Of a DNA stretch of 64,000 nucleotides, positions 13,631 through 38,371 are shown piece by piece; within the stretch, counting starts at the first letter, position 1; every line of letters begins with the position of its first letter. The stretch is from Asterias rubens. Lineage: Eukaryota. The notes under the pieces were generated by a model. It saw only the letters and a list, made by a program, of their open reading frames with translations, was not told where the DNA came from and ran no database searches. Location of the stretch: positions 16,740,001 through 16,804,000 of the forward strand of contig NC_047072.1 of assembly GCF_902459465.1 (NCBI RefSeq), given 5' to 3'. A program made the position numbers and the translations under genes.

Positions 13631-13784
13631 GTTCTATTGCAGACAATTTAATAAGTGCAGTTCGTGTATATGCACGTGTGAAAGTATTCGTAATAGTACA
13701 AATACAACTGGGCATATGACGAACTCGGACCATTTCTAACTATCAAAGACCGTCTGTTTTTTTTTTTTTTTTTTTCTTTAATAT

Positions 13785-18626: not shown

Positions 18627-20720
18627 ATGTTTCTCGTCAACCTCGTACCCCTGCTTCTGCTAGTCGGTGTGTTGACTCAATCAGGAGTAGATGCAGATGA
18701 ACAACTGGGGGAACAAGCGAATAATCTTCGAGGTGAATATTAGTATATAGATTCTCTATTTTTCATTTTGAGCAAGATACCTGACTTGAATTGCTTCGTT
18801 TCACACATTGGTGAAACTGGGTCATATTGTGTGAGAAAAAAGCCTTGGGAGCGTTACGTTGCCCACAGCAGGCTGTACTGAGAAAACGGGATGTTATTGG
18901 CCCAATGACCAAGGCACTTAAAGGCAGAGTTGGTTTTTACTCAAAATAATAATCATCATAAAACCTTTCTTGGTGACAAGTAATGGGGAGAGGTTGATAG
19001 TATGAAACATTGTGAGAAACGGCTTCCTCTGAAGTGCTATAGTTTTCGAGAAAGAAGTAATTTTCCACGAATTTGATTTCGAGACCTCAGATTTAGAACT
19101 TGAGGTCTCGAAATCAACCATCTAAACGCACACAACTTCGTGTGACAAAGGTGTTTTTTACTTTCATTATTATCTCGCAAGTTCGATGACCGATTGAGCT
19201 CAAATTTTCACAGGTTTGTTATTTAATGCATATGTTGAGATACACCTACTGTGAAGGCTAGTCTTTGACAATTACCAGTAGTGTCCACTGCCTTTAAATG
19301 GACAGCGCATCAATACGGTTGTTGTAAAAATTAATGCACCATTTAAGAACTTGTTCTTATTATTACTAAACAATTGAAACTTTTGTTATCTCCAGATACG
19401 GTGAAATCCTTCTACGACAAGTTTATCGAGTACAGCATCAATGATGATACGGATGCCCTGATAGGTTTACATGACGAAAAATGCAGTATACTGATTGACG
19501 GTTTGCCACCCACTACTGGAGTTGACGGTAGGGGGCGCACTTCTTTTTTTTTTCTCTGATCCACAACCATAAAAATAAAACACTGTATCAAAAATACAAA
19601 CAAATTTATTCGTAATTGTTGCCGTTCAATGTGCAGTTGTTAACTTTCATGGAACAGTGTGTTGCTAAGCTACCATTAACTCTTTGCAAGAATATTCTTT
19701 TCTTAACCGTCGTTATTAATTACATTTTTTTTTTTTTTGGGTTAGAAATACGATCTTTGTTGAAGCTGATACCCGAGAGAGCCGTTCACATTGAGCCCAC
19801 CTATTGGGATGTAAAGGCGATGGATAGCAATGCAGAGTATGTGTACGTCACGGTGCATCTCGATTATTTCAATGAAGCGGGTGAAATAATCATAGCTACA
19901 AAGTAAGTATTTCATTCATTCATTCATTTTCTTAAAAATGAAAAAAAAATGACAGCACAAAGCAGAGTTATGTGGCATTACAATAAATATTGATAAAAAT
20001 TGCGCAGATAAAAGACAAAGATGACAATAAATTGAAATATAAGTTTGATAAACCACTGAGAGGGCATTATTAAAAATGCACAGGGTGTTGTGGGTTAGGG
20101 GAGTTAGGGTTATGGTTATGGTGAGATGTTAGGGTTGTGCTATAGACCGTTCAATTTATGGTATACTGGCATGGCCGGCCGATTGGTAGCAAAAAAATCA
20201 ATCGTGTTCAACACAAATTGTGACAACATTTCAACATTTTCTGCTAAGACTCGCGAGCTGAAATATCTCTTATGATTTGTTGATTTGTTTCCAACAAATT
20301 CCACCACATTTTTGAATTATATAGTTTTGTAACATTTTTTACAAACTATGGCTATCTGTTTTTGTTTTGCATGAACGGCCTTTATAGTTCTCCAGCCTAG
20401 GTTGGCAAAATATCGGCCTATGACCCCCCCAACCCCACCCCAAATACGGCGAACTGTGTCCAAACCTCTTTTGACAGCGCCCTCTTTTGAATAAATTCCC
20501 ATAATATGGAGGACAACCGATGTTGCAAAGATTATGTTGGGTAAGGCTAAAATATACAGGCTCATATTTATTTTGATTTTTTTTTTCAAAATGTTTCTTA
20601 ATCTGTGTTTTTTCTGTATTATTTTTATTTGACAGTGGAATAAATATCCTAAGGAAGAATCCAGATGGATACAAGTTTTACATCGTGATAATCAACAGAC
20701 ATAATCAACAATTAGCTTAG
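18627..20720 (+). CDS. Secreted NTF2/SnoaL-like (DUF4440-type) protein, copy A, 159 aa
   Basis: Exons 18627-18732, 19396-19527, 19746-19902 and 20636-20720; GT-AG introns in phases 1,1,2; 480 nt in total. Protein: MFLVNLVPLLLLVGVLTQSGVDA/DEQLGEQANNLRDTVKSFYDKFIEYSINDDTDALIGLHDEKCSILIDGLPPTTGVDEIRSLLKLIPERAVHIEPTYWDVKAMDSNAEYVYVTVHLDYFNEAGEIIIATNGINILRKNPDGYKFYIVIINRHNQQLA. The gene model is well supported; the fold is assigned by pattern recognition. Confidence 0.85.
18918..19297. mobile_element. TTAA-flanked MITE in intron 1 of copy A
   Basis: TTAA at 18918-18921 and 19294-19297. The same insertion sits in copy B at 24503-24877. Confidence 0.85.
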
Positions 20721-21269
20721 TGTAGCGACGTATACACTTTAAACTCATACCGTAAAGGTACAGGCCTACCTCAGCTGAGGTCTCGAATTCAATTCAAATA
20801 TTTTTGTGAGAAAATACTTCTTTCTTAAAAACTAAGTTAATACGTGTACTTCAGAGGGAGCCGTTTCTCACAATGTTTTATGCTATCGCCAGCTCTCCGT
20901 TGCTCGTTACCAAGTAAGTTTTTATGCTAACAATCATTTTGTGTAATTACCAATAATGTCCATCGGTGCATTTAACATCACACTACAGTTATAGATAATA
21001 AAATCACAGAGTTGGACCGCCCTCAAAATACTTCCCTTTTTAATAACTGCTTTATAACGTTACTAATATTTCAATAATGATCATCATTATATAAAGTTAA
21101 CATACCCAAACACATCATTATACTATCTCCTCCACACTCTCTGCGAACGTTCGAAATGTTTGAAAATGGGGACGACTTCTTCCTAAACATGAATAAATAA
21201 ATAAACTAAACAAAGCATTGTGAAATACTGTGTTCAAGTCCAGTGTGTGTGATAATTCTTTATCATTGT

Positions 21270-21750
21270 AATAATAATAATAGTATCGAAGTCTGCTATA
21301 GCGCACGTATCTACCAAGCAAGGTACTCAAGGCGCTGAGTATAAATACATTTACAGAAAGATGGGTTATTAAAGTTGTGAATTATTTGGCAAAATAATAG
21401 AGCACCTTATAAGGGTTTAATTCAATTCAATTCAATTCAATTCTTTATTCATCATGCCCAGCATGAAAATCACGTTCTCGATTTGCACATTAACATAAAG
21501 TATACAAGGTGCTACGGTGCATACAGCAGCCACAGCCAGGTACACCGGGGTGAACCCCTTCTCTTTTGGATATAAGTGCACTGGGTTCTTTTACGTGCGT
21601 TACACAACACATGAGACCAACGGCTTTACGCCCCATCCGAAGGACGAAGAAATGGTTAAGTGCCTTGCTTAAGGACACAAGTGTCACGATGGGGGGGGGG
21701 GGGATTCGAACCCACATTATGCTGATCAGAAACACCAGAGTTTGAATTCA
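21270..21750 (-). mobile_element. tRNA-derived SINE
   Basis: B-box-like GGGTTCGAATCC head on the minus strand and a (TTA)n tail. Homologous copies at ~26850-27330 and ~29165-29577, partial at ~53390-53535. The 29.5-kb copy also shows the A box TGGCCGAGCGGTTAAG. Confidence 0.75.
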
Positions 21751-21951
21751 TTGGCGTTGCCTTATTTGCCATACCTGCAATGTATGTAAAATAAAATGAT
21801 GTTCTTTTCCATAACCGCAGTACTTCGAAGTGGAATGTTTCTCAAAATGCATTTCACTATCCAAACTGCTGTAATGCTTACCACGTAGGTTTTTAATGAC
21901 ATTGATTTACAAACCCACTACCAAACGTATACAGAGCCCTTTTCACCTTTT

Positions 21952-22519
21952 TTAAAGACAGTGGACACTATTGGTAATTGTCAAAGAATAGTCTTAACAG
22001 TTGGTGTATCTCAACATATGCATAAACCAACTAACATGTGAAAGTTTGAGCTCAATCGGTCGTCGAAGTTGCGAGATAATAATGAAATAAAAAACACCCT
22101 TGTCACACGAAGTTGTGTGCTTTCAGATGCTTGATTTCGAGCCCTCATCAAGTTCTAAATCTGAGGTCTCGAAATCAAATTTGTGGAAAATTATTTATTT
22201 AATTTATTTTATTTTAATTCTTCGGACAAAAAAAGCAAAACAATAAAACAAGCACAGGCCGTCCAGGGAAGGGCAAAAGGCTAAAAACTGTCATCAAAAA
22301 AGATGTGCTCTCCCAGACCTAGCTCATAAAAAATACACATTATATATACTATACATTAAACATTATCAAATTACTTCTTTCTCAAAAACTACACCACTTC
22401 AGAGGGAGCCGTTTCTCACAATGTTTTATTCTGTCAGCCTCCCCCATTACTCGTAATCAAGAAAGGTTTTATGCTGATAATTATTTTGAGTAATTACCAA
22501 TAGTGTCCACTGTCTTTAA
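21952..22519. mobile_element. TTAA-flanked MITE with a ~180-bp internal insertion
   Basis: Family TIRs and TTAA at both ends. The insert at ~22195-22370 resembles ~35015-35090. Confidence 0.75.
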
Positions 22520-22689
22520 GCCTAATAAAACAAAACAATTATAATAAATAATTGGATGCGTAATTTGATCGATGGCGATTACGTGTTAATTTTCGCTAGA
22601 AAGTTTTTTTTTTTTTTTTTTTTTGACTCATGTGCATTGCCCGTAAATTAATTTGTTTTTCAGATACAAGAATCTTTATAAATATTTGG

Positions 22690-22890
22690 GTTTTACCCAT
22701 AAACACCGATGCGTGATAGCACTTTATACTCTCGAGTTCTGTGGAAAAAACCCATATCACAGGCATATTGCTCAGGTGTGATTCGAACCCACGATATTTG
22801 CAATGCTAGAGCAGTGTCATACTATACCGAAATTGCCCGGTAGGTAGAGGCAGTTCAAATCCTATTAGCAGCGGGTACTGCAACGATTTG
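22690..22890 (-). mobile_element. Second tRNA-derived SINE-like family
   Basis: ACCGATGCGTGATAGCAC...GATTCGAACCCACGA...CTAGAGCAGTGTC. Related copies at ~58130-58300 and, inverted, at ~49290-49450. Confidence 0.6.
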
Positions 22891-22990
22891 GGTCTAACCT
22901 AATGAAGTATTTTTTACCCACGATGCAAAATGTCCATATATATTATTAAACATATTTGTTTAAGCCACACACAAGTTTAGATTAGTCTAC

Positions 22991-23521
22991 AGCTACCAAA
23001 ACCTCAAGTCTACTGCCTCATATACAGAATAACTTCGGATCCATTCTCATAGATCTCGTTTTATATCACATCACTAAAGCTCCAGACGATCTACAGGTTC
23101 AGTTTTTCAAGCCGTGTCTTTAGAATCGAGAATAAATCTTGTTTATCTCAGGAAGCATTTCCCACAAAAAAAGCTGCCAAACTTCTCTGAAAATCAAAAG
23201 TTTTAAGAACTACATTTGGAGCACATCCAGGTCTGCATATAGCCCGTTTACAATTCACGCAGTGATAGTTGACGGTCTACAACCCGAGTAATCCCCGACT
23301 GCATGAAAACTTAAGTGATTTCTTCCCGACTTGGCCCCGAACGTACAACACAAACGCTGACTGATCTACGATAAAGATTTGGCCGACTGATATTAGGCAT
23401 TCACGGACACGCCCACTTGTTTCTTAAAAAAGTTCCATGCATAGTGATTGGACGGCAGTTGCTATGACGTATTTGACTGGATTTACATACGGTGACTTAG
23501 TGATGGATGTTTACCCCCTCA
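22991..23521 (-). repeat. Orphan duplicate of the PRSS23-like promoter, 5'UTR exon and intron segment
   Basis: Collinear with 15843-16367 (starts AGCTACCA-AACCTCAAGTCTACTGCC). It lacks the splice acceptor and the coding exon. Confidence 0.9.
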
Positions 23522-24211
23522 GCGTCCTGTGTGTTTCCTGGTGGATTTTCCCCAAATTACGATTCAGATTCAGATCCCAAGTCTGTGTGATGTGTGAAGA
23601 TTAGTCCTTAATACTCCACGGAGGCAACGAAGGCGATTGCCTCCATGCCCCATGGGTGCCCTTGAAATGCTCCAGTAGAAACATACTATTACCTCATGGT
23701 GCCCTTTACCAAGGAGAATATGCCTTGGTGTCATTGCCCTTTCAAAAACGAAGCATACAGGACTAGCAGAGTAGGCGTATTTTTCTACTATGTCACGAAG
23801 CTTGATAATTCTTTTATTTTCTTGTTTTACCTAATGATTTAATCATTCTCAATTATGAGTTTATAGTTAATTTGTTAGGGATTATGCGCTAATTATGGCT
23901 CGAGCATACAGTTTGTTATTTTGTGTGAGTACTACAAAAGACAATCACACTATGCAAACTACTTTGTGCTAATTGTTTTTTAAATAATCTTCTTATTAAC
24001 AATCATTAACAATAGTTAAAATAGGAGAGCTCTGCCCAGCATATTCTTGGGGTAATTACTGTCCATAAAATGTGCCTTTCGTTTGAAAATCTATTTAAAT
24101 GTTGGGAGTGCAGCCTTTTTACGTTAGTCTTGTCGCATACAAGCATCATCAACAACCTTACTAACATTATCTTCGTCTACAACACAAAACGGAGCAAGAT
24201 TCAAAGGCAGT

Positions 24212-26307
24212 ATGTTTCTCGTCAACCTCGTGCCCCTGCTTCTGCTAGTCGGTGTGTTGACTCAATCAGGAGTAGATGCAGATGAACAACTAGGGGAACA
24301 AGCGAATAATCTTCGAGGTGAATATTAGTATATAGATTATCTATTTTTCATTTTGAGCAAGGTACCTGACTTGAATTGCTTCGTTTCACACATTGGTGAA
24401 ACTGGGTCATATTGTGTAAGAAAAAAGCCTTGGGAGCGTTACGTTGCCCACAGCAGGCTGTACTGAGAAAACGGGATGTTATTGGCCCAATGACCAAGGC
24501 ACTTAAAGGCAGAGTTGGTTTTTACTCAAAATAATAATCATCATAAAACCTTTCTTGGTGACAAGTAATGGGGAGAGGTTGATAGTATGAAACATTGTGA
24601 GAAACGGCTTCCTCTGAAGTGCTATAGTTTTCGAGAAAGAAGTAATTTTCCACGAATTTGATTTCGAGACCTCAGATTTAGAACTTGAGGTCTCGAAATC
24701 AACCATCTAAACGCACACAACTTCGTGTGACAAAGGTGTTTTTTACTTTCATTGTTATCTCGCAAGTTCGATGACCGATTGAGCTCAAATTTTCACAGGT
24801 TTGTTATTTAATGCATATGTTGAGATACACCTACTGTGAAGGCTTTGACAATTACCAATAGTGTCCTCTGCCTTTAAATGGACAGCGCATCAATACGGTT
24901 GTTGTAAAAATTAATGCACCATTTAAGAACTTGTTCTTATTATTACTAAACAATTGAAACTTTTTTTATCGCCAGATACGGTGAAATCCTTGTATGACAA
25001 GTTTATCGAGTACAGCATCAATGATGATACGGATGCCCTGATAGGTTTACATGACGAAAAATGCAGTATACTGATTGACGGTTTGCCACCCACTACTGGA
25101 GTTGACGGTAGGGGGCGCACTTCCTTTTTTTCTCTGATCCACAAATACAAACAAATTTATTCGTAATTGTTGCCGTTCAATGTGCAGTTGTTAACTTTCA
25201 GGGAACAGTGTGTTGCTAAGCTACCATTAACTCTTTGCAAGAATGTTCTTTTCTTAACCGTCGTTATTAATTACATTTTTATTTTTTTTTTTTGGTTAGA
25301 AATACGATCTTTGTTGAAGCTGATACCCGAGAGAGCCGTTCACATTGAGCCCACCTATTGGGATGTAAAGGCGATGGATAGCAATGCAGAGTATGTGTAC
25401 CTCACGGTGCATCTCGATTATTTCAATGAAGCGGGTGAAATAATCATAGCTACAAAGTAAGTATTTCATTCATTCATTCATTTTCTTAAAAATGAAAAAA
25501 AAAAATGACAGCACAAAGCAGAGTTATGTGGCATTACAATAAATATTGATAAAAATTGCGCAGATAAAAGACAAAGATGACAATAAATTGAAATATAAGT
25601 TTAATAAACCACTGAGAGGGCATTATTAAAAATGCACAGGGTGTTGTGGGTTAGGGGAGTTAGGGTTATGGTGAGATGTTAGGGTTGTGCTATAGACCGT
25701 TCAATTTATGGTATACTGGCATGGCCGGCCGATTGGTAGCAAAACAATCAATCGTGTTCAACACAAATTGTGACAACATTTCAACATTTTCTGCTAAGAC
25801 TCGCGAGCTGAAATATCTCTTATGAGTTGTTGATTTGTTTCCAACAAATCCCACCACATTTTTTAATTATATAGTTTTGTAACATTTTTTACAAACTATG
25901 GCTATCTGTTTTTGTTTTGCATGAACGGCCTTTATAGTTCTCCAGCCTAGGTTGGCAAAATATCGCCCTATGACCCCCCCCCCAACCCCACCCCCCCCCC
26001 AACCCCACCCCCCCCCCCCCCCCCCCCCCCAATACGGCGAACTGTGTCCAAACCTCTTTTGACAGCGCCCTCTTTTGAATAAATTCCCATAATATGGAGG
26101 ACAACCGATGTTGCAAAGATTATGTTGGGTAAGGCTAAAATATACAGGCTCATATTTATTTTGATTTTTTTTTTCAAAATGTTTCTTAATTTGTGTTTTT
26201 TCTGTATTTTTTTATTTGACAGTGGAATAAATATCCTAAGGAAGAATCCAGATGGATACAAGGTTTACATCGTGATAATCAACAGACATAATCAACAATT
26301 AGCTTAG
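24212..26307 (+). CDS. Secreted NTF2/SnoaL-like protein, copy B, 159 aa
   Basis: Exons 24212-24317, 24976-25107, 25300-25456 and 26223-26307, with the same lengths and phases as copy A. Three amino-acid changes were seen (F>L, V>L, F>V). Confidence 0.85.
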
Positions 26308-27366
26308 TGTAGCGACGTATACACTTTAAACTCATACCGTAAAGGTACAGGCCTACCTCAGCTGAGGTCTCGAATTCAATTAAAATATTTTTGTGAGGAA
26401 ATACTTCTTTCTTAAAAACTAAGTTAATACGTGTACTTCAGAGGGAGCCGTTTCTCACAATGTTTTATGCTATCGCCAGCTCTCCGTTGCTCGTTACCAA
26501 GTAAGTTTTTATGCTAACAATCATTTTGTGTAATTACCAATAATGTCCATCGGTGCATTTAACATCACACTACAGTTATAGATAATAAAATCACAGAGTT
26601 GGACCGCCCTCAAAATACTTCCCTTTTTAATAACTGCTTTATAACGTTACTAATATTTCAATAATGATCATCATTACATAAAGTTAACATACCCAAACAC
26701 ATCATTATACTATCTTCTCCACACTCTCTGCGAACGTTCGAAATGTTTGAAAATGGGGACGACTTCTTCCTAAACATGAATAAATAAATAAACCAAACAA
26801 AGCATTGTCAAATACTGTGTTCAAGTCCAGTGTGTGTGATAATTCTTTATCATTATAATAATAATAGTATCGAAGTCTGCTATAGCGCACGTATCTACCA
26901 AGCAATGTACTCAAGGCGCTGAGTAAAAATACATTTACAGAAAGATGGGTTATTAAAGTTGTGAATTATTTGGCCAAATAATAGAGCACCTTATAAGGGT
27001 TTAATTCAATTCAATTAAATTCAATTCTTTATTCATCATGCCCAGCATGAAAATCACGTTCTCGATTTGCACATTAACATACAGTATACAAGGTGCTACG
27101 GTGCATACAGCAGCCACAGCCAGGAACACCGGGGTGAACCCCTTCTCTTTTGGATAAGTGCACTGGGTTCTTTTACGTGCGTTACACAACACATGAGACC
27201 AACGGCTTTAACGCCCCATCCGAAGGACGAACAAATGGTTAAGTGCCTTGCTTAAGGACACAAGTGTCACGATGGGGGGGGGGGGATTCGAACCCACATT
27301 CTGCTGATCAGATACACCAGAGTTTGAATTCATTGGCGTTGCCTTATTTGCCATACCTGCAATGTA

Positions 27367-28468
27367 AACTGCTCACAAAAAGTAAGGAAACTTTTTTCAA
27401 TCCAGTATATTTGTTATTATTTATTACTCTCTTTGTATGTGGTATATATCAATGCAAAGCTGAACTGTTCCTCTTTAAAATGATACCATATTTGCAATGA
27501 TTACATGTTGCTGAACTTGGCTACACGAATAACAATGAGGCAAAGTCACAAACCAAATGTGCCAAAATTACCGTTGTCTGTGCTAAATGGTCAATAGGTA
27601 ATGCTCAATTAGTCAAACCGATCAAGCTTTTCAGAACCATTAATGGTTTACACAAAGATTTGCACCAGTGAGCTCATCAGAAACAATTAACCCTCATCTC
27701 TTGAAAAACACCTTGTTTGATGGGTATTTGCAAGGCGATATTCTACAGCCGATTGCAGTCCCATACTTGCAGACTCTTAGACCAAAATGCCATCTTTCAA
27801 GATGACAACGCTCGCCCCCATCGAGCCCGACTGGTGACTGACTATACCTGAACAATGTTGGGGTGCGCCGGATGGATTGGCCCGCTAACAGTCCAGACCT
27901 GAATTCCATGGAACATCTGTGGGACCAGCTTGGCCTCGCTGTCCGCGACAGAACCACCAACACATCAACTGTGGCTGACCTAACCAGGTTCCTTAATGAA
28001 GAATGGAACGCCATCCCTCATCATCAGCGCATCAAAATACTTTTGTGCAGCATGAGACGAAGGTGCCAGGCTGCCATCAACGCCTTCGGATCATCCACTC
28101 GTTGCTGTACTTTTTGTATCAGTAAAGTGTATTAAGATCACTAAGTTGTCTTGCTCTATACCAAACTTCTTGTCTCAATAAAGTGGATTAAGATCAGTAA
28201 GATGTCTTGCTTGTTTGAATTACAGTGTCAATTTGATTGTTCGTACAGTAACACACAAAATTGCTAATTTTGGCACATTTGATTTGTGACTTTGTCTCAT
28301 TCTCATTAACGTGGTCAAGTCCAGCAACATGTAAACATTGCAATTGTGGTATCATTTTGAAGAGGAACAGTTCAGCTTTGCAATGATATATACCATATAC
28401 AAAGAGAGTATTAAATAATAACAAATATACTGGGTTGAAAAAAGTTTCCTTACTTTTGGTGAGCAGTT
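27367..28468 (+). mobile_element. Internally deleted Tc1/mariner transposon with long (~200 bp) TIRs and a TA TSD
   Basis: TA at 27365-27366 and 28469-28470. TIRs begin AACTGCTCACAAAAAGTAAGGAAAC and end GTTTCCTTACTTTTGGTGAGCAGTT. Internal frameshifted transposase C-terminus: FQDDNARPH...WPANSPDLNSMEHLWDQL. The empty site CAATG-TA-TGTAAAA is present at ~21778-21792. Confidence 0.92.
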
Positions 28469-29689
28469 TATGTAAAATAAAATGATGTTCTTTTCCATAA
28501 CCGCAGTACTTCGAAGTGGAATGTTTCTCAAAATGCATTTCACTATATCCAAACTGCTGTAATGCTTACCACGTAGGTTTTACTGACATTGATTTTCAAA
28601 CCCATTACCAAACGTATCAGACCTTTTGTTATTGATTTGTTTTTTTGCAGCCCAATAAAAAAAAAACAATTGGGGGGGGGGGATTTTAGGCCCCCATATA
28701 TCGTGAAGATTATGAGCATGCTCTGCAGCATTTTAGACATGCTCTAAAAATGTGCACAACGTAATTTTGACTTCACCCAGGTTGTTAATCTATAAACCCA
28801 TTATGGTCATCCCCAAGTCCTTTTAGAGGGTTTGTAGATGTTTTTAACCATACTTATTAAAATATGACAATTTGTTTTATGTTATGTTGCTAATTGTTTT
28901 TTCTAAATGTTGTCCCAATACATAATGCATACTGTACTGCATGAGCACTACTACTATACTGCAACAAAAACTTGGGTGCTCAAAGTTACACCATTGGTTG
29001 TCTTCACATGATAGATACGGAACAAAGAATCAAAATTAACATTAAGGTTTAAAGAAGTTAGTGTTATTTTAACACCCTTGGTGTTCATTTTTTTATTATT
29101 TTTATTATGAAGGGACAAGACCGTTGTGTTACTTTTTTGCAGTGCATTATTATAGTATTCGTAGGTTATAATAATATAAATACAGAAGTCTTGTATAGCG
29201 TATCTACCAAACAAGGTACTCAAGACACTCAGTATATACAAAATTTCAGAACTAGGGTATTGCAGTGATGATTTTTAGACCCAATTATGAAGCACCTTAT
29301 AAGGGTTTACAAGGTGCTACGGCGCATACGGCAGCCACAGCCAGGAAACACCGGGTCGAACCCCCTCTCTTTTCGATAAGTGCACTGGGTTCTTTTACAT
29401 GGGTTACACAACACATGGGACCAATGGCTTTACGTCCCATCCGAAGGACGAAGCAATGGTTAAGTGTCTTGCTTAAGGACACAAATGTCACGGCTTGGGA
29501 TTCGAACCCACGCTCTGCTGATCAGAAACACCAGAGTTTTTAATTCGGTGCACTTAACCGCTCGGCCACAACACTTCCAAGGAAATGTGGGATATATATA
29601 AAAAGCCTTTAACCCACAACTTCAAATCCCAAGACCTTTCAGAACAGAAGAACCACACGCGAATGTCAATAATTTTTGGTGATTTCTAG

Positions 29690-31786
29690 ATGCAATCGTG
29701 ACCGTGTTTGATAAGATGGTCGAGTACAGCCTGAAGGATGATACACAGTCCCTCATGACGATGTCGTATGCTATGTAGATCTCGTTTTGAAGTCCATAAT
29801 CCAGTTTACGGCTGGGTCCTCAGCCAGGTGAAGGGCTTTGATGCCACCATCAAGGTGAGAGAGTGGGCAGTCATCTATCATGTGGCGCATCGTCTGTGGT
29901 TCTCCACAATCACAAAGCGGAGATGCAAGGTAGCCCCACTTGTGTAGGCTGCTGCGGCACGGCCCTGCGTCTGTACGAAACCGGTTTAAGACGCACCAAT
30001 GGCCGCGCGGGAGGTCCATTCCCGGAAGTTGGATGGTGGGGTCAGCGACCAGGAACTTGTGGGGGACGTTGGTGTGGTCTCGCCACCGTGTGCGCCATAG
30101 ATCTTCTGCTGTCGCTGCACTGTCCGGGACATTGGACCAGATTGGGTTTCTAGACTTAAGTCTAGGCCTAGGGTGGAAGTCAAGGTCTCTGAGGAGAGGG
30201 AGCTCAGGGTTGGATCGGATCTTACAGACCAGCCTAGATGTGGCTACCTCTCTTCGGATGTCTGGAGGGGCAATGTTGCTCAGGACTGGGAGCCAGTCTG
30301 TCTTTGTACTGCGAACGGCGCCAGTGATGGTTCTCATGGTGTTGTTGAGTTGGACGTCGACAAGGCCGGTGTGGACAGAATTCCTCCAGACTGGAGCACA
30401 GTACTCAGCCACTGAGTAGCAGAGGGCTATAGCAGATGAGCGGAGTGTCCTTGTCTTAGCTCCCCAGGTTGTACCACCGAGCATGTGGATCAAGTTGTTT
30501 CTGGTCTGGATTTTGGCAGCTACTTTCTGGAGGTGAGGTTTGAAGGTGAGTGTACGGTCCAGGGTGACGCCAAGGTAAGTCGGTTTGGGGGCGTGGCTCA
30601 AACGTTTTCCGTTGAGAAAGATGTCTAGCTCTTGTTGGCTTTTTGCATTGTGCAGGTGAAAGACACTGGATACTGTTTTAGCCACACTGGGCTGAAGTCG
30701 CCAGCGTTTACAGTATTCACTGATCTTTGCTATGTCATCATTGATAGTGGTGCCGAGGTCTTCAAACGTTCTTGCTTGGTGGGCGAGGCAGATATCATCA
30801 GCACAGATGAACTTTCGGCACATAGTGGCTGGGAGGTCACTTGTGTACAGGTTGAACAGGGTGGGTGCCAGTACTGATCCTTGTGGCAAGCCGTTCTTCT
30901 GCATTCTCCATGAGCTACAAGTGTCTCCCATATGGACACGAAACCGTCGTTGTTGCAACAGCAGTTCAACTATGTCAACGGCCCAGCGTGGTAGTACTTT
31001 GGAGATTTTGACTAGCAGACCTTTGTGCCACACAGTGTCATATGCAGCAGTTAGATCCAGGAAGACGGCGCCAGTCTTTAGGCCTTGCTGGTATCCGTTT
31101 TATAGTCCCTCATAAAACTGTTTCATCAAAACGCAACAATCATGATGGGTGGATTGCCGCCTGTCATTGGACATGAAGGTAATTAACCGTTTCTCCTTTT
31201 TTTTTCTTTTTCCTTTTTTTTTTTGAATTTTTTTATATTCATACTTGATTTGTAGTTCAAAGATTAATTAATATGTAAAACAAATAACTAATAATATTTG
31301 CATTTACGTATTGATGTTCAAACATTCTAAAATATGCATCCCTGTGGATACACTTCTTTCCATTGTTCAGGTACTTAAGATTTTCCCGTAGACTCTGTGC
31401 ACCTAATTGCTTGTGGTACATCCCGGTCTTGAGAACTTCCCTATGGAGTCATTTTATTTCTCCCTCATTTGTTTTTTCCCATAAGGTACCGAGTATGGGA
31501 ATAGTGTTGGCTCTTTTAAACGAAAAAAAAAAAAAAAAATTAATTATTGCTTAATATTTTCACTGTATTTTTTGGGTTGTCTAGTTGTTATTGTTTGGTT
31601 AATATATGTTTTCGTTTTTATTTCGGTAGAAATACGAACTTTGCTGGAGATCTTACCCGAAAAAGCCTCCGACATCAAATGCATCCTTAAAGTGATGGAG
31701 CCAATGGATGAAAGCGCAGACTTTGTGTACGTCGCAATTCACTTTGAATTCTACAACGAATTGGGAGAAAAATACATGGATGGGAA
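29690..31786 (+). pseudogene. NTF2/SnoaL-like copy C, disrupted by a LINE insertion in exon 2
   Basis: Exon 2 halves 29690-29756 and 31114-31178 rejoin to exactly 132 nt (DAIVTVFDKMVEYSLKDDTQSLIKLFHQNATIMMGGLPPVIGHE). Exon 3 at 31630-31786 is intact (157 nt). No exon 1 or exon 4 was found. Confidence 0.85.
29757..31103 (-). mobile_element. 5'-truncated non-LTR retrotransposon (I group, Ingi/Vingi-like), 1347 bp
   Basis: Uninterrupted RT frame from GAVFLDLTAAYDTVWH through LPQGSVLAPTLFNLY, CADD and YLGVTLDRTL to a C-terminal CDCGEPQTMRHMIDDCP zinc knuckle, with no RNase H seen. Stop at 29771 and a short 3' tail CATACGACATCGTC. TSD AGTCCCTCAT at 29747-29756 and 31104-31113. Confidence 0.93.
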
Positions 31787-32829: not shown

Positions 32830-35424
32830 ATGTTTCTCGTCAACCTTGTACCCCTGCTTCTGGTGTTCGGTGTGTTGACTCAATCTGGGGTTGATGCAAC
32901 TGAACATCTTGAGGAAGATCAGAGTGATCTTCGAGGTAAATATTTCAAGAATATCTTGATTTTACTTTAGTTGTAGAGTGTGACAAGAAGCAATTATATT
33001 TAAACCTTTCCATATCTTGTTTGCACCATGCAAAGTTTTTCCTACTTATTCTGATTTTTTTTTATATACAAATAAAACTACAAAACATATTGGTTTTTTT
33101 TATATTTGCAGAAGTGGTTGTGTCATTGTTTGATAAGTTTATAAACGCAAGCCTCAGCGGTGACACGGATGCGGTTGTGAGCCTTCACGACAAAGATGCT
33201 AAGATATTAATAGATGGCTTTCCTCCGGTTATTGGACTTGACGGTAGGCCCATACCTATCTATTTACATGATTTCTACATCATTGCATTGTATTGGCACT
33301 GGAAACCATTGGTAATTGCTCAAAACAGATGTTAGCACAAAACTTACTTGGTAATGAGGAATGAGGAGCTGTTGATAGTGTAAACGATGTGAGAAACGGC
33401 TCCCTCTAAAGTAACGTTGTTTTTTATCACGAATTGTTTTCTCACTAAAATGTTTGAGTTGACCTCATCAGCTGCGGTCTCGAATTCAAGGCATCTGGAA
33501 GCACACAACTTGTGCAACAAGGGTGTTTGTTTCCCTTCATTATTATTTCGCAACTTCGACTACCAATTGAGTTCATAGGTTTACTTTCATAGGTTTGTTA
33601 AGGTATGCATAAGTTGAGATAAACCAAGTAAGAAAACTGGTCTTTGACAATTAGCAAAGGTGTCCAGTGCCTTTAAATCTTGAATCTTGTATTGGTCTAC
33701 TCTCCTGAAAACATTGATGCTGTCTTGGAGAGGGTGCGTTGCAAAATCCATTTGTGCTCTGTGCGTGTACTGTCAACATTTGTTTTGTTTATTTGATGTT
33801 TATGATTTATTTGGGTAGAGATACGCACTCTGGTGGAGCTCCTACCCGAAAGAGCCGCTGAAGAAAAGTTTACCATCAAAGAGTTGTGGCCAATGGATAA
33901 AGACGAAAACTATTTGTACATCCGTTATCACTTTGATTATTTCAACAAGTCCGGTGAGAACTACCTCGATGCGAGGTAAGTGATAATAATAACAATAATA
34001 ATAATAATAATAACAACAACAACAATAATAATAGTAACCAGTTTTTATAATCACCTTTCTTAAGGGCGTCTCAAAGCACTTCTTGCATTGTTACCCCTGG
34101 TCATGCACTCCTTAAATCATCTCAGCTTTCGAGGAAGTATACAACCTGTAACAAATACAAATCAATCACAAGAACAGTAATTACAAGAATCGATCACAAG
34201 AACCATCTCTGTCACAGGTACCCATTTACCCGGCCCCTGGGTGGAGAGAAGCAAGTGCATAGTTAAGTGTTTTGCTCAGGGACACACAAGGGTCACGACC
34301 GGGAATTGAAAAAAATTAAATATAAAAAAAGGCCGCTTAGTGCCATCTTAAAGGGTATATATGTATTTTTTCCTAACAAAAAACACAAAGTCCACAGACT
34401 TACACAGTTTAAAAATTATGAAAGTAGAAAGCTTCTCTTGAAATTTTACTTACTGAGGTGCTGTAGTTTTTGAGAAATGAGTAAAAGTAATAATTTTCTT
34501 CTCAGTTTTAGCATGTAAAAACGTGTTAACAAGTTATGCTATGGTTTTGGTATAATATCATAACTGGTTAAGGGGATTTTACATGCTAAAATAATTTGGG
34601 TCTCATTAGACCAAAACTATTTTGTGACTTGTTTTACTCATTTCTCAAAAACTTCATCACCTCAGTAAGTAATATTTGAAGGGAAGCTTTCCACATCATT
34701 ATCTTCAAACACTGTAAGTTTAATGTAAATCTATGGACATTTTGAAACCTTTAAAGAGTGTGTTTTATTTTCTATCATTTAAACAACAAAATAATAATAA
34801 TGTTTTGAACTAGTACACACTGCTAACAGACATAAGGCCAACAATAAAGAAAACAGTTTAGCGTCCTCACCCGCTTCTTTTTTAGAGACCGGCACTTTTT
34901 TTGTTCACGGAAAAAGGGTAAATTTCAACGATCTCAGTCGATTGTTGTTGCTTGTAAATATTTATTTATTTATTTATTTCATTTTAAATCTTCGGACATA
35001 ATTCTTTGTTGGCAGGGGCCGTCCAGGGTAAGGCAAAAGTTTTAAAAACTGTCATCAAAGCGATGTGCCCTCCCAGACCCCTCCAACAAAAAACATAAAC
35101 GTTTATAAAACTACAGAAAATAAAAGCATGAATTAAAAAATAAGTAGATAATAACATACAAAAGTACAAAACGCTACATTAAATTAAAAAAATCCCAGCC
35201 GGTTGGTTGTCTGTAAAAAATGTGTCGGCGGTCATAAAAAAAATAGCCATATTCCCTTTTTTTTCAAAAAAGGGCTAGACGGCTAAATCTGTTTCTGTTT
35301 GAATTTGGCATAACCAAACATCTTATCTGTTAAATTTCACAGTGCATTGGCAGTCTTCAAGAAGTCTGACGACCAGTACAAGATTCACATAGTGATGTTC
35401 AACACTCACAACCAAGCAATATAA
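32830..35424 (+). CDS. Secreted NTF2/SnoaL-like protein, copy D, 158 aa
   Basis: Exons 32830-32935, 33112-33243, 33819-33975 and 35343-35424 (106/132/157/82 nt), phases 1,1,2. C-terminus SALAVFKKSDDQYKIHIVMFNTHNQAI resembles the DUF4440 last-hairpin pattern (v.v.kk..dg.wki). Confidence 0.85.
33295..33676. mobile_element. TTAA-family MITE in intron 2 of copy D
   Basis: Family body ending in GTGTCCAGTGCCTTTAA. Absent from the equivalent intron of copy E. Confidence 0.75.
34060..34320 (-). mobile_element. SINE fragment in intron 3 of copy D, with a homolog in intron 3 of copy E (~37615-37850)
   Basis: Both begin GGGCGTCTCAAAGC just after an AT-rich tract and share TACCC.TTTACCC...GGTGGAGAGAAGCAA...TTGCT.A.GGACAC. 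Confidence 0.6.
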
Positions 35425-36336
35425 TAAGACGTCATGTGAACCACTCCCTTCACGGTTATCACTTTATGTTCGTCACGATCGTCACTGACTCTACCCCCAC
35501 AAAACAGTCTAGAATACTGTGACAGTTATTTGTCATAGTCAATATTTAATGTAATTTTCTTAGTGCAATTGTCAACGTGTTATCTTTAATACTCTTAATT
35601 TCTTCAACCAATTCCGTGGGTAACATTGCATTGCTTTAATGTGTCAATCTGTCACAGTGTTTCATGCAAGATGGGCTAAGATTCATAGAGCTGTTTAAGC
35701 ATTGACTAGTTACTAAGCAAAACACAATTATGCTTACCATAATAAGGTTACCAGCCAAACTATACCATGTCACAAGTACATTTTATGACTGGTATCCTGC
35801 TGATTTCTGTTTAGCAGTTGATTTTTTAAGCAATATTTTCTGCTTGACCAGCTCTGTAAAATTGGACCCTGCCCAAAAAACTCGGTATCTTGCGGCAGAA
35901 ACAAGTTAATAAAAAAACCATGTCGTACAAAAAGAGGTTTCTTGTTATTTCATACGAGTTCTAGTGTAAAAGACAATTATTATACAACTAATGAGGAGCT
36001 TATGTTGAATGTTGGGGATAAGATGCGCTAATGGTTACAATATTAACCCGTCGTTTATGCGGGTTTTGTTTAATTATAATAGAAAGAGAGAATTGCCAAT
36101 CAGTTCACGGTAATTTATTATTACTTTATAAAATTTAATTGACGGTTGAAAATCTGTATAAATATTTTGAGTAGAGCCGTTTAGCGTTAGAAGCGACTTC
36201 TCGCATACAAGCATCAGCATCAATCGTGGGAGGTATCGCAATTATTTCCTGACGCAAGAAGAGTACTGCAGTATACTGATTTGCGCTGTAGAAGTATTTC
36301 TTCTTCTTATTATTATTATTGAGAATCAAAATTAGT

Positions 36337-38371
36337 ATGTTTCTCGTCAACCTTGTACCCCTGCTTCTGGTGTTCGGTGTGTTAACTCAATCTGGGGTTG
36401 ATGCAACTGAACATCTTGAGGAAGACCAGAGTGATCTTCGAGGTAAATATTTTAGAATATCATGATTCTATTTTAGAAGTAGAGAATAATGTTTAATGTC
36501 ACGTAATGTAATTAATGTGTAGGCCTAGTTCTACAGTTCGTTTTATTCACTTATTTTGAAAAATATATAAAGCCAAAAGTATTTCAAAACTAAAAGTCGT
36601 GCTGGTAACCTCTCCACTCTTGTGTTTTTATCGACTCTTTTTACATTCCTATTTTTTTCTGCTAATCTGCTTATTGTAAAAACATTACCGTTTTTTAGCT
36701 GTAATAATTGTATTTGCTAATTTTTGTGTTTCTTTGAAGCGCTTTGAGGCCCTGCAGAAGGCGCGATATAAATGTTTCTTGATACTTATTATTATAACCT
36801 TTGTGATTTGTAGAAGCGGTTGCGTCCTTGTTCGATGAGTATATTAGCGCTAGCCTCAGCGGTAACACGGATGCAGTGGTGAGCCTACACGACAAAGATG
36901 CCAAAATATTGGTCGAAGGTTTTCCTCCGGCTACTGGACTTGAGGGTAGCTGCTTTTACTTAATTTCTAAACCTACATTTCGCATAATACATTGAATTTT
37001 TTAAATCTTGAATCTTGAATTGTTCTACTCTTATAAAAGCTTTGCTGATGCCATAGAGAGGATGTGTTGCAAAATATAATGTGGTCGGTGCTTATGCTGT
37101 CAATATTGTAAACAAAATAAAATCATACATTAATATTTTGCAATTAAATTTAAACTTAAGATAATATACACATTCTTGCTAAGCTATCACTATGCAAGAC
37201 TTGTCTATCCTTCATTATATTGTTTGTAGTTTTGCCATTTAGCTTTTGATAAAACTTCTGGCCGAAACGTGACGCCACTAACTTTTGTTTGCGTTTATTA
37301 TTATTATTATTATCATTTTTTTTCTTCTGAAAATATCTTTTAACATTCGTTTTGTTTATTTCGTATTATGATTTATTTTGGGTAGAGATACGGACTCTGG
37401 TGGAGCTCCTACCCGAAAGAGCCGCTAAAATGAAGTGGACCGTAAAAGAGGTGTGGCCGATGGATAAAGACGAAAACTATGTATACGTCCGATTTTACTT
37501 CGAAAATATCAACAAGTCCGGAGAAAAATACCTTGATGGGACGTAAGTAATGAATAATAAAAATCGTAATAGCAATAATAATAACAACCAGGTTTTTTTT
37601 AGCGGCTATAAACACTCGAAGGGCGTCTCAAAGCGCTTCCACCATTTAATTCATTCCTTAAACCATTAGCTACAGAGACAGTAAACAGCCTATGCAACAG
37701 TGTGCTACTAAGCTCAATCACAAGAAGTATCTCCGCCCTCACATATACCCGTTTACCCCTAGGTGGAGAGAAGCAATTATGTTTGGTGTCTTGCTTAAAG
37801 GGACACAAGTGTCCCGACCGGGATGCAAACCCACACTCTGCTGTACATGAAACATTATAACAAAATGGCCGCGCTATGTCATCTTGAAGAGTGTATTTTA
37901 TTTTCTAGTATTCATTTTTTGTTCATTCTTCGGAGTGTGAAACGTCTGAAAAAAAGATTAGACCTAGTCAAGGGAAGTACATACCACAACTGCGTCCGAA
38001 ACGAATTTAGTCTGGCTAGTTTTGAACTAGCAGCTAACTTGCAGAGGCCGGCTCCTTTTTTTTTATATATTATTTTGAGAACGGAAAACAATATTTTTTT
38101 AACGATCTCAGACGCAAACAAAATTGAAAAAATACCCCAGACAGTTGTCTTTAAAAATGTGTCGGCGGCCATTTTTCGGCGGCCATTTTGAAAACAAAAA
38201 CCTACCTCCTTCCTTTTATCAAATGGCAGGGCGATAAACATGTTTTTTTTTTTACCTAACCAAGACTCTTATCTTTCGTTATTTCACAGTGCATTGACCG
38301 TCCTCAAGAAGTCTGAAGACCAGTACAAGTTTTACTTAGTGATGTTCAACACTCATAACCAAGCAACCTAA
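36337..38371 (+). CDS. Secreted NTF2/SnoaL-like protein, copy E, 158 aa
   Basis: Exons 36337-36442, 36814-36945, 37386-37542 and 38290-38371, with the same lengths and phases as copy D and an open frame. Confidence 0.85.

What the first reader, a model, noticed from the sequence alone, without database searches (positions are those of the whole stretch)
18627..38371. Hidden five-gene tandem family of secreted NTF2/SnoaL-like pocket proteins
Seen: four intact 4-exon genes and one disrupted copy, with identical exon sizes (106/132/157/82-85 nt) and phases, a clear signal peptide and almost no cysteines. The mature part follows the SnoaL/DUF4440 pattern: helix, D.DA...L.D.D..I...G.PP..G..EIR, then beta strands ending in (K/R)K..D.YK. 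Established: this fold forms a cone-shaped hydrophobic pocket in ketosteroid isomerase, polyketide cyclases and scytalone dehydratase, while the well-known animal members (NTF2, NXT1, G3BP, CaMKII hub) are intracellular. Inference: a lineage-expanded secreted system for binding or modifying small molecules (steroids, saponins, pigments, chemical cues or microbial metabolites), possibly of ancient bacterial origin and since intronised. I do not recognise a named animal family for it.
Basis: partly seen in the sequence, partly recalled or inferred. Interest (0 to 1): 0.85.

Follow-up and report, generated by a model that had tools for sequence, protein, structure and literature searches.

The report
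Secreted NTF2-like gene family, starfish
This stretch of the common starfish (Asterias rubens) genome holds four intact, transcribed genes and one broken copy for small secreted proteins with the cup-shaped NTF2/SnoaL fold; the family is real and restricted to sea stars, but what the cup binds or does is unknown.

Summary
Window 18627-38371 holds four intact 4-exon genes: A, B, D and E. Exon sizes are 106/132/157/82-85 nt, all GT-AG, with identical phases. A fifth copy, C, is broken. RNA contigs from two runs join the D and E exons at exactly the predicted junctions.

The window is Asterias rubens LR699102.1, about 16.74-16.80 Mb. A, B and D are already annotated as "uncharacterized protein" (LOC117297009, LOC117296369, LOC117296370). 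E is not among the called genes. C is a pseudogene remnant.

The NTF2/SnoaL fold is supported:
- AlphaFold2 on the 92%-identical A. amurensis ortholog of E gives pLDDT 90.
- The best solved match is the putative ketosteroid isomerase 3hx8 (VIA Z 19.4, rmsd 1.9 Å).
- Atlas shape search gives TM 0.87-0.88 to bacterial DUF4440/YybH models.
- Pfam SnoaL_2 and TIGR02246 each match 5 of 6 members. SnoaL_2 fell below its cut-off where the score was shown.

The family is larger than reported, with at least 10 loci in A. rubens and one-to-one A. amurensis orthologs. No relatives were found outside sea stars.

Secretion is inferred from the signal peptide only. Small-molecule binding is my best guess (about 0.4). 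Bacterial origin is untested. Other first-stage notes of this scan describe NTF2-like arrays elsewhere in this genome.

A secreted animal NTF2-like protein already has a precedent in C. elegans SFP-1. Interest is moderate.

The parts
18627..20720 (+). Gene A (LOC117297009, XP_033636021.1). Four exons: 18627-18732, 19396-19527, 19746-19902, 20636-20720. Product 159 aa: signal peptide, acidic linker, NTF2-like domain.
   Evidence: Model. Product is identical to P0022. It is a called gene in L002. Its exon 4 plus 3' region is held at 0.53 of sampled words in RNA run X1.
24212..26307 (+). Gene B (LOC117296369, XP_033635138.1). Four exons: 24212-24317, 24976-25107, 25300-25456, 26223-26307. Product 159 aa, 98% identical to A. 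A and B are a recent tandem duplicate.
   Evidence: P0015 equals B. The duplicated unit 18380-21943 versus 23952-28627 is 93-98% identical, introns included. dS between A and B is 0.029.
29691..29757 (+). Pseudogene C, 5' part of exon 2 (67 nt, including the left copy of the target-site duplication).
29758..31103 (-). 5'-truncated LINE fragment inserted into exon 2 of C. Its reverse-transcriptase ORF lies at 29771-31033 on the minus strand. It is flanked by the 10-bp duplication AGTCCCTCAT (29748-29757 and 31104-31113).
   Evidence: 420-aa RT-like ORF. Junction sequences.
31114..31178 (+). Pseudogene C, 3' part of exon 2 (65 nt). 67 + 65 = 132 nt, the family's exon-2 length. A GT donor follows.
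31630..31786 (+). Pseudogene C, exon 3: 157 nt, open frame, AG acceptor and GT donor. No exon 1 or exon 4 of C could be found between 26308 and 32829.
   Evidence: Negative blastn and tblastn.
32830..35424 (+). Gene D (LOC117296370, XP_033635140.1). Four exons: 32830-32935, 33112-33243, 33819-33975, 35343-35424. Product 158 aa. The 3' UTR runs to about 35755.
   Evidence: Model. RNA contigs of X1 and X2 join 32935|33112 and 33243|33819. X2 record 8 runs exon 2, exon 3, exon 4 and the UTR. D is 94% identical to its A. amurensis ortholog P0014.
36337..38371 (+). Gene E, not among the called genes of the public record. Four exons: 36337-36442, 36814-36945, 37386-37542, 38290-38371. Product 158 aa.
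   Evidence: Model. RNA joints 36945|37386 and 37542|38290 appear in X1 and X2, and X2 record 11 spans exons 2-4. No gene is called between D and the MFS transporter gene. The A. amurensis ortholog XP_071801121.1 (P0001) is about 92% identical.

Best explanation
Shown:
- This is a real, transcribed tandem array in Asterias rubens, chromosome record LR699102.1.
- Each intact gene encodes about 158 aa. Exon 1 gives a cleavable-looking signal peptide (MFLVNLVPLLLLVGVL..SGVDA) and a short acidic linker.
- Exons 2-4 give one compact NTF2-like domain of the SnoaL_2/DUF4440/SgcJ type, with elements a1-a2-b1-a3-b2-b3-b4-b5.
- The predicted mature protein is about 15.5 kDa, pI about 4.6, with no or one cysteine.
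- The array belongs to a sea-star-restricted family of at least 10 loci. The paralogs are old (45-50% identity), and each is kept one-to-one between A. rubens and A. amurensis under purifying selection.

Inferred mechanism (probability about 0.4): the proteins are released outside the cell as soluble carriers. They hold a small hydrophobic molecule in the cone-shaped pocket between the helices and the curved sheet, and different paralogs have different ligand preferences. Sterol- or saponin-like compounds are plausible candidates in a sea star. This would be a role like that of lipocalins, odorant-binding proteins or NPC2 families.
For: - Gene structure and splicing.
- Identity of the locus and its annotation.
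- Fold, sequence level: Pfam SnoaL_2 in 5 of 6 members, best E 6.3e-5. TIGR02246 in 5 of 6, best E 1.1e-5. PDB profile hits are MonBI at 4.4e-4 and ketosteroid isomerase at 0.03. Language-model features score 0.96, with all ten best named clusters in the NTF2 clan.
- Fold, structure level: AlphaFold2 pLDDT 90, pTM 0.82. Foldseek PDB gives 3hx8 at E 6e-10, TM 0.74-0.79, and every one of the 50 rows listed (of at least 500 matches at E <= 0.001) is an NTF2-like or cystatin-like-fold protein. VIA gives Z 19.4, rmsd 1.9 Å over 121 residues. Atlas shape gives TM 0.87-0.88 to bacterial DUF4440/YybH.
- Secretion features: hydropathy 2.7 for residues 2-16, nothing above 1.25 elsewhere, no C-terminal retention motif, and an N-x-S sequon at N122 in D and E.
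- Carrier rather than enzyme: the ketosteroid isomerase Tyr14 position is F/Y/V/L. Word depth is high in RNA run X1, up to 1251 for D. There are many old paralogs with dN/dS 0.28-0.49 and one-to-one orthologs.
- The nearest solved scaffold family has been turned into vitamin-D3 and digoxigenin binders (5ien, 5iep, 4j9a). This shows the pocket can hold steroid-like ligands.
Against: - No ligand, no proteomic detection and no tissue information were obtained.
- The signal peptide was judged by simple rules, not by SignalP.
- The confident model is of the A. amurensis ortholog of E, not of a window protein. The window's own protein B gave only pLDDT 54 with a shallower alignment, although its Foldseek hits were also NTF2-like.
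- An invariant acidic residue (D70, end of b1) lies within one position of the catalytic Asp38 of ketosteroid isomerase and of the equivalent Asp of MonBI in profile alignments. A His in b3 is nearly invariant. An enzyme therefore cannot be excluded.
- NTF2-like domains also act through protein-protein contacts.
Confidence: 0.4

Rival explanations
1. Secreted or secretory-pathway enzyme. The NTF2-like pocket would catalyse an isomerisation, dehydration, cyclisation or epoxide opening on a small lipophilic substrate, as in ketosteroid isomerase, scytalone dehydratase, SnoaL, MonB/Lsd19, limonene epoxide hydrolase or the bile-acid 7-alpha-dehydratase BaiE.
For: - The best sequence-level PDB hits are enzymes: MonBI/MonBII at E 4.4e-4 and ketosteroid isomerase at 0.03.
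- The conserved acidic residue at position 70 (Asp, Glu in A. rubens gene E) aligns at or next to the catalytic Asp of MonBI and ketosteroid isomerase.
- A His in strand b3 is kept in nearly all members.
- Structural neighbours include LinA, LEH, BaiE and scytalone-dehydratase-like proteins.
Against: - The oxyanion-hole Tyr14 position of ketosteroid isomerase is not conserved.
- The b3 His is Tyr in E in both Asterias species.
- Most invariant residues sit in hairpin turns (MD, FN..GE, K..D.YK) rather than in obvious pocket positions.
- The closest structural family (DUF4440/YybH/SgcJ) has no established chemistry.
- A family of ten abundant paralogs fits binders at least as well.
Confidence: 0.2
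2. Secreted signalling or effector protein that works through protein-protein contacts, as a pheromone, a reproductive factor or an immune factor. The NTF2-like domain would serve as an interaction module rather than a ligand cup.
For: - C. elegans SFP-1 is a small seminal-fluid protein with a signal peptide plus an NTF2-like domain. It acts by binding SKN-1 in recipient cells (PMC12669617).
- A rust-fungus secreted effector has an NTF2-like fold (PMC6889267).
- Sea stars have other lineage-restricted tandem families of secreted proteins with highly conserved signal peptides and a proposed pheromone role: the Acanthaster attractins (PMC11957666).
- Here exon 1 is 81-98% identical in nucleotides among paralogs whose other exons are 52-67% identical.
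- The family is taxonomically restricted.
Against: - There are no data on partners, tissue or season.
- dN/dS of 0.28-0.49 shows no sign of the diversifying selection common in recognition or pheromone families.
- Homology to SFP-1 was not tested.
Confidence: 0.2
3. The genes descend from a bacterial DUF4440/SnoaL_2 gene acquired by horizontal transfer in a sea-star ancestor, and gained introns and a eukaryotic signal peptide afterwards. This concerns origin and is compatible with any of the functions above.
For: - The nearest sequence families (SnoaL_2, TIGR02246) and the nearest structures (3hx8, Atlas DUF4440/YybH clusters) are overwhelmingly bacterial.
- Several of the solved bacterial chains begin at residue 24-39. 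That would fit a removed signal peptide, which is my inference and is not stated in the entries.
- No homolog was found in other animals.
- The proteins have no or one cysteine, unusual for animal extracellular proteins.
Against: - Similarity to any bacterial protein is too low for a tree: SnoaL_2 scored 22.2 bits against a cut-off of 27 where the score was shown.
- A whole-library HMMER search with exon 3 found no bacterial relative.
- A scan of 185,579 bacterial and archaeal genomes also found none.
- DUF4440-type domains also exist in eukaryotes (one search lists eukaryote-like entries; a sponge example is in PMC4633127).
- Other first-stage notes report further NTF2-like arrays in this genome, which could be the endogenous source.
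Confidence: 0.25

Closest known systems
Bacterial DUF4440 / YybH / SnoaL_2 / SgcJ-EcaC (TIGR02246) proteins. The closest solved example is 3hx8, a putative ketosteroid isomerase from Mesorhizobium loti.
   Same: - One-domain NTF2-like cone of about 125 residues with the same element order.
- VIA Z 19.4, rmsd 1.9 Å, 20% identity to 3hx8.
- TM 0.87-0.88 to Atlas DUF4440/YybH clusters.
- The shared 'D.DA...L..D' and 'G.PP..G...IR' sequence pattern.
- Function is unknown in both.
   Different: - This is an animal family with three introns and a eukaryotic-type signal peptide plus an acidic linker encoded by a separate exon.
- Where the score was shown, the match fell below the Pfam cut-off (22.2 against 27 bits).
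- It forms a multi-paralog family confined to sea stars.
Ketosteroid isomerase, SnoaL polyketide cyclase, scytalone dehydratase, MonB/Lsd19, limonene epoxide hydrolase (the NTF2-like enzymes).
   Same: - Same fold.
- A conserved acidic residue at the end of b1, near the position of the ketosteroid isomerase Asp38 and the equivalent MonBI Asp.
   Different: - The ketosteroid isomerase Tyr14 position is not conserved.
- The other catalytic sets could not be mapped without coordinates.
- These enzymes are cytosolic microbial or fungal proteins, not secreted animal proteins.
C. elegans SFP-1, a seminal-fluid protein (PMC12669617).
   Same: A small animal protein built as signal peptide plus NTF2-like domain, and shown to be secreted.
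   Different: It comes from a different phylum. Sequence relatedness was not tested here. SFP-1 acts through a protein partner (SKN-1). It is a single gene, not a tandem family, as far as the paper says.
NTF2, NXT1/p15, G3BP and the CaMKII hub (the classical animal NTF2-like domains).
   Same: Same fold: Z 15-16 to NTF2 and p15, and TM about 0.7 to CaMKII hubs.
   Different: Those proteins are intracellular, lack a signal peptide, and act by protein binding or oligomerisation. Pfam NTF2 gives no hit and CaMKII_AD matches only one member at E 0.063.
Acanthaster attractins, a crown-of-thorns starfish spine-secreted family (PMC11957666).
   Same: A lineage-restricted tandem cluster of small secreted proteins in a sea star, with the strongest conservation in the signal peptide.
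   Different: The sequences are unrelated, and the authors report that family as absent from Asterias. The precursors are cleaved into peptides. No NTF2 fold is reported.

Membership tests
NTF2-like superfamily (fold level) | An alpha+beta cone: three N-terminal helices packed on a curved antiparallel sheet, in the order a1-a2-b1-a3-b2..b5. | tested here: met
   - AlphaFold2 model m2c34d7ffdce2: pLDDT 90, elements H2-21, H25-30, E32-40, H49-58, then four long strands.
- Foldseek PDB: E 6e-10, TM up to 0.84, and all 50 rows listed are NTF2-like or cystatin-like-fold proteins.
- VIA: Z 19.4.
Pfam SnoaL_2 (PF12680) | Whole-protein score at or above the curated gathering cut-off of 27 bits. | tested here: not met
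   P0001 scores 22.2 bits, E 2.2e-4. Five of 6 members match at E <= 1, best 6.3e-5; bit scores were not listed for the others. The public record lists the hit on D as 'weak'.
NCBIfam TIGR02246 (SgcJ/EcaC family) | A match to the family model above its curated cut-off. | tested here: inconclusive
   Five of 6 members match, best E 1.1e-5. The cut-off was not shown for these members, and member 1 (gene B) has no hit.
Ketosteroid isomerase | The catalytic set Tyr14, Asp38 and Asp99 (Comamonas numbering). | tested here: not met
   In the profile alignment to 6uad, the Tyr14 column is F/Y/V/L in the family. The conserved acidic residue at position 70 (Asp in most members, Glu in gene E) lies one position from residue 38. 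Asp99 was not mapped.
Classically secreted soluble protein | An N-terminal cleavable signal peptide, no other membrane segment and no retention signal. | tested here: inconclusive
   - Hydrophobic core at residues 2-16 (mean hydropathy 2.7).
- A small-residue motif V-D-A at -3..-1.
- No later hydrophobic window above 1.25.
- C-termini are NQQLA, NQAI and NQAT.
- No SignalP run and no proteomic detection.
Expressed, spliced gene (not a pseudogene array) | Transcripts that join the predicted exons, absent from DNA runs. | tested here: met
   - D: all three junctions are supported.
- E: junctions 2-3 and 3-4 are supported, in RNA runs X1 and X2.
- The DNA-like run X5 is collinear with the introns.
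- Organism B run X3 holds a diverged spliced ortholog.
- A and B: only indirect support, 0.53 of words in X1.
Conserved animal family with one-to-one orthologs across phyla | Detectable orthologs in other animal phyla or other echinoderm classes. | tested here: not met
   - Whole-library HMMER with the exon-3 profile gives 13 hits. Eleven are family members, and the last two (680 and 1330 aa) match only short repeated stretches.
- Word-indexed searches with 1, 4 and 27 sequences return only Asterias proteins and fragments.
- Fragments from two further assemblies of unidentified species were also found.

The most novel reading that the evidence does not exclude
The family would be an extracellular system for handling the sea star's own steroid chemistry (delta-7 sterols, polyhydroxysteroids, asterosaponins). 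The proteins would be carriers that shield tissues or deliver these compounds as chemical signals, or secreted isomerase- or dehydratase-type tailoring enzymes. They would have been built from a DUF4440-type gene that entered a forcipulatid ancestor from bacteria, and then gained introns and a shared signal-peptide exon that is kept uniform by gene conversion.
Probability: 0.1. Interest if true: 0.8.

Novelty: new member of a known kind. Interest (0 to 1): 0.4.

Why it matters
If these abundant, cysteine-poor, secreted NTF2-like proteins bind or modify small molecules, they would give sea stars a previously unrecognised class of extracellular carriers or enzymes.

That is relevant to saponin and sterol biology, chemical communication and defence in an ecologically important predator.

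The family is also a clean case of a taxonomically restricted gene family whose fold is recognisable only by structure prediction. It shows an unusual pattern: a near-uniform signal-peptide exon joined to deeply diverged domain exons.

Practically, gene E should be added to the A. rubens annotation, and the family could receive a name.

Tried and rejected
1. Pfam on single exon translations gave nothing. The spliced window proteins have no contiguous reference, so I did not paste them. I worked instead through database proteins that are identical (P0015 = B, P0022 = A, P0025 = D) or orthologous (P0001, about 92% to E).
2. The first AlphaFold2 run, on gene B with a shallow alignment, gave pLDDT 54. 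I replaced it with a run on a deeper alignment that includes exon pieces from other assemblies.
3. The Atlas search with exon 3 alone was uninformative, with scores about 0.6.
4. The scan of bacterial and archaeal genomes for relatives found none.
5. Literature searches for the LOC and XP identifiers, SnoaL or DUF4440 in starfish, and NTF2-like in echinoderms found nothing relevant.
6. The supplementary proteome tables of two A. rubens papers do not contain the identifiers. The footprint-protein paper has no supplements held.
7. Exon 1 and exon 4 of copy C were sought with tblastn and short-word blastn and not found.
8. I considered a cystatin-type protease inhibitor, because the fold class is 'cystatin-like' and a trypsin-like gene lies upstream. 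I rejected it: all close matches are NTF2-like, not cystatins.
9. I considered a membrane anchor. I rejected it: the only hydrophobic segment is 15 residues at the extreme N-terminus and contains a proline.
10. The species behind GCA_014845345.1 and SRR26532981 could not be identified with the tools.

Full report
**1. What is in the sequence**

A tblastn search of the whole window with the exon peptides finds five copies, all on the + strand, between 18.6 and 38.4 kb, and nothing convincing elsewhere. Exact models with canonical GT..AG introns and identical phases (1, 1, 2) are:

| Gene | Exon 1 | Exon 2 | Exon 3 | Exon 4 |
|---|---|---|---|---|
| A | 18627-18732 | 19396-19527 | 19746-19902 | 20636-20720 |
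| B | 24212-24317 | 24976-25107 | 25300-25456 | 26223-26307 |
| D | 32830-32935 | 33112-33243 | 33819-33975 | 35343-35424 |
| E | 36337-36442 | 36814-36945 | 37386-37542 | 38290-38371 |

Exon sizes are 106/132/157/85 (A, B) or 106/132/157/82 (D, E). The products are 159 or 158 aa.

Copy C is a remnant:
- Its exon 2 is split at 29757/31114 by a 1.35-kb 5'-truncated LINE fragment. The reverse-transcriptase ORF lies at 29771-31033 on the minus strand.
- The insertion is flanked by a 10-bp target duplication, AGTCCCTCAT.
- The two exon halves add up to exactly 132 nt.
- Exon 3 (31630-31786) is intact.
- No exon 1 or exon 4 can be found.

**2. Transcripts**

Contigs of two RNA runs of organism A (X1, X2) join D at 32935|33112 and 33243|33819. 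One X2 contig runs exon 2, exon 3, exon 4 and about 330 nt of 3' UTR. For E, the joints 36945|37386 and 37542|38290 are present in both runs, and one X2 contig spans exons 2-4.

A run of a second species (X3) holds a diverged, equally spliced D-like transcript. The DNA-like run X5 is collinear with the introns and shows none of these joints.

Word depth of the D contigs in X1 reaches 734-1251. This is a poor measure, but it suggests abundant mRNA. The exon 4 plus 3' region of A is held at 0.53 of sampled words in X1. I could not lay reads a second time, so expression of A and B is only indirectly supported.

**3. Where this is and what is annotated**

A whole-library HMMER search with the exon-3 profile returned a full-length 158-aa protein (P0001) and exon-sized ORF fragments. 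Follow-up searches named the organisms.

- P0015 (XP_033635138.1, LOC117296369, Asterias rubens) is identical to gene B.
- P0022 (LOC117297009) is identical to A.
- P0025 (LOC117296370) is D.

The window is LR699102.1 at about 16,740,001-16,804,000 of assembly GCA_902459465.3. All are named 'uncharacterized protein'. Between D and the next called gene, an MFS transporter starting at about window 40452, no gene is on record. E is therefore unannotated here, although its A. amurensis ortholog XP_071801121.1 is annotated.

**4. The family is larger than the window**

- About 160-180 kb downstream on the same chromosome lie three more 4-exon paralogs with the same exon sizes: F (LOC117296326), G (LOC117296937) and H (LOC117296739).
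- Two more, I (LOC117304501) and an adjacent copy J, flank an Arf-like GTPase gene on LR699112.1.
- A maximum-likelihood tree gives well-supported one-to-one A. rubens / A. amurensis pairs for A/B, D, E, F, G and H. It places the A/B duplication after the species split.
- The same tree places a sequence from another assembly (GCA_014845345.1) beside the F/G clade, so the paralogs predate the genus.
- A and B sit in a 3.5-kb duplicated unit that is 93-98% identical, introns included.
- Pairwise dN/dS is 0.28-0.49, which indicates purifying selection.
- Outside sea-star material nothing was found. The evidence is 13 hits in 1.84 billion representatives, of which 11 belong to the family and the last two (680 and 1330 aa) match only short repeated stretches; three word-indexed searches; and no bacterial or archaeal relative.

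**5. Fold**

Sequence level:
- Pfam SnoaL_2 matches 5 of 6 full-length members, best E 6.3e-5. The one score shown, 22.2 bits for P0001, is below the 27-bit cut-off.
- NCBIfam TIGR02246 (SgcJ/EcaC) matches 5 of 6, best E 1.1e-5.
- A family profile against PDB sequences gives MonBI/MonBII at 4.4e-4 and ketosteroid isomerase at 0.03.
- Language-model features of the mature gene-B protein score 0.96, with all ten best named clusters in the NTF2 clan.

Structure level:
- The first AlphaFold2 run (gene B, 19 rows) was poor, with pLDDT 54. Even so, its Foldseek hits were almost all NTF2-like.
- I deepened the alignment with exon pieces from contigs of other assemblies. The second run, on residues 30-158 of the A. 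amurensis ortholog of E, gave pLDDT 90 and pTM 0.82, with the order a1-a2-b1-a3-b2-b3-b4-b5.
- Foldseek against PDB gives 3hx8 at E 6e-10 and TM 0.74-0.79. All 50 rows listed (of at least 500 matches at E <= 0.001) are NTF2-like or cystatin-like-fold proteins.
- VIA-align gives Z 19.4, rmsd 1.9 Å over 121 residues.
- AlphaFold DB clusters are DUF4440, SnoaL-like and NTF2-family proteins.
- Atlas shape search gives TM 0.87-0.88 and rmsd 1.6-1.8 Å to bacterial DUF4440/YybH clusters.
- Swiss-Prot neighbours are CaMKII hubs, LinA, ketosteroid isomerase, limonene epoxide hydrolase and NXT.

The NTF2/SnoaL reading is therefore well supported at the fold level. Membership of a specific Pfam family is not established.

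**6. Secretion**

- Residues 2-16 form the only strongly hydrophobic segment (mean hydropathy 2.7, against at most 1.25 elsewhere).
- This segment is followed by ..SGVDA and an acidic stretch.
- There is no C-terminal retention or GPI-like signal.
- D and E carry an N-x-S sequon at the invariant N122, as do several other members.

This is a classical signal-peptide picture, but it rests on simple rules. No SignalP was available, and no proteomic evidence was found.

**7. Mechanism**

Shown: the fold, the architecture, transcription, the old paralogs under constraint, and the restriction to sea stars.

Inferred: an extracellular role that uses the NTF2 pocket. I rate a small-ligand carrier role as most likely (about 0.4), for four reasons:
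- The ketosteroid isomerase Tyr14 position is not kept.
- The nearest structural family has no known chemistry.
- The transcripts look abundant.
- Many old paralogs, each conserved between species, is the pattern of binding-protein families.

An enzyme (about 0.2) stays open. The conserved acidic residue at the end of b1 (Asp70, Glu in gene E) lies at or next to the catalytic Asp of MonBI and ketosteroid isomerase in profile alignments, and a His in b3 is nearly invariant.

A protein-binding signalling or effector role (about 0.2) has direct precedent in C. elegans SFP-1 (PMC12669617). Sea-star 'attractins' offer an analogy (PMC11957666).

Without model coordinates I could not decide which conserved residues face the pocket.

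**8. Origin**

The nearest relatives by sequence and by shape are bacterial, and no other animal homolog was found. But the similarity is too low for a tree, and no close bacterial relative exists in the collections searched.

Eukaryotic DUF4440-type domains exist. Other first-stage notes of this scan report further NTF2-like arrays on other pieces of this genome, which I could not examine. Bacterial origin is possible but not shown (about 0.25).

**9. An unexplained detail**

Exon 1 (signal peptide plus linker) is 81-98% identical in nucleotides among paralogs whose exons 2-4 are only 52-67% identical.

Its history also conflicts with the rest of the gene. Exon 1 of G is 97% identical to that of A, while exons 2-4 of G are closest to F (79-95%) and only 55-65% identical to A.

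The similarity runs a few tens of bases into the flanks. This points to gene conversion or exon exchange between clusters about 170 kb apart, rather than to selection on the peptide alone.

**10. Verdict**

- The fold interpretation is supported.
- Function and origin remain inference.
- 'Hidden' and 'five-gene' need correcting.

This is a new, unnamed, sea-star-restricted member of the NTF2-like superfamily with a secreted architecture. That architecture already has an animal precedent. Interest is moderate.

Noticed in passing
window 18627-18732, 24212-24317, 32830-32935, 36337-36442; L001 8392-8496 (minus strand): Exon 1 (signal peptide plus linker) is 81-98% identical in nucleotides across paralogs whose other exons are 52-67% identical. 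Exon 1 of G groups with A/B (97%), although exons 2-4 of G group with F. This looks like gene conversion or exon exchange between clusters about 170 kb apart.
   Followed up: partly
L001 (LR699102.1:16936182-16958051) 1101-4048 (-), 6412-8496 (-), 10001-11870 (+): A second cluster of three intact paralogs (F, G, H) with the same 4-exon plan lies about 160-180 kb downstream of the window on the same chromosome. It sits next to an SH3-domain gene.
   Followed up: yes
L012 (LR699112.1:8124616-8148665) 10001-14050 (+) and 21218-22860 (+): Two further paralogs (I and J) lie on another chromosome and flank an Arf-like GTPase gene. The annotated 187-aa product of I starts 27 residues upstream of the signal-peptide-like Met, so its start codon is probably mis-called.
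   Followed up: partly
L003 420-709 (GCA_014845345.1, JACSEG010015862.1): In another, unidentified species, exons 2 and 3 are one continuous exon (intron 2 is absent) while intron 3 is kept. This is an intron loss or gain within the family.
   Followed up: partly
window 27694-28135: Tc1/mariner-type transposase remnant (for example ..WPANSPDLNSMEHLWD..). It lies inside about 1.1 kb of extra DNA downstream of gene B that the duplicated A unit lacks.
   Followed up: no
window 33282-33669, 34446-34833, 35610-35803, 37744-37937 (also 21483-21745, 27067-27354, 29265-29543): Very high-copy repeats in the introns and spacers. Summed contig depth is 10^4-10^5 or more in every run, both DNA and RNA. 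Several translate to the ..DSNP(H/R)SADQ.. string, which I take to be typical of tRNA-derived SINEs.
   Followed up: no
window 25952-26062 versus 20402-20494: A G/C-rich simple repeat in intron 3 of gene B is expanded relative to the same place in gene A.
   Followed up: no
window about 14531-15760 (-) and from about 40452 (+): Flanking genes in the public record: upstream, a 409-aa product with a weak trypsin match; downstream, an MFS_1 transporter of 452 aa.
   Followed up: no
window 38433: Both an RNA contig (X2 record 11, 1092 nt, of which 623 nt lie off the stretch) and a DNA-like contig (X5 record 25) stop matching the window at 38433, about 60 nt past the stop codon of E. This may be a polymorphic insertion or an assembly difference in the 3' UTR.
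   Followed up: no
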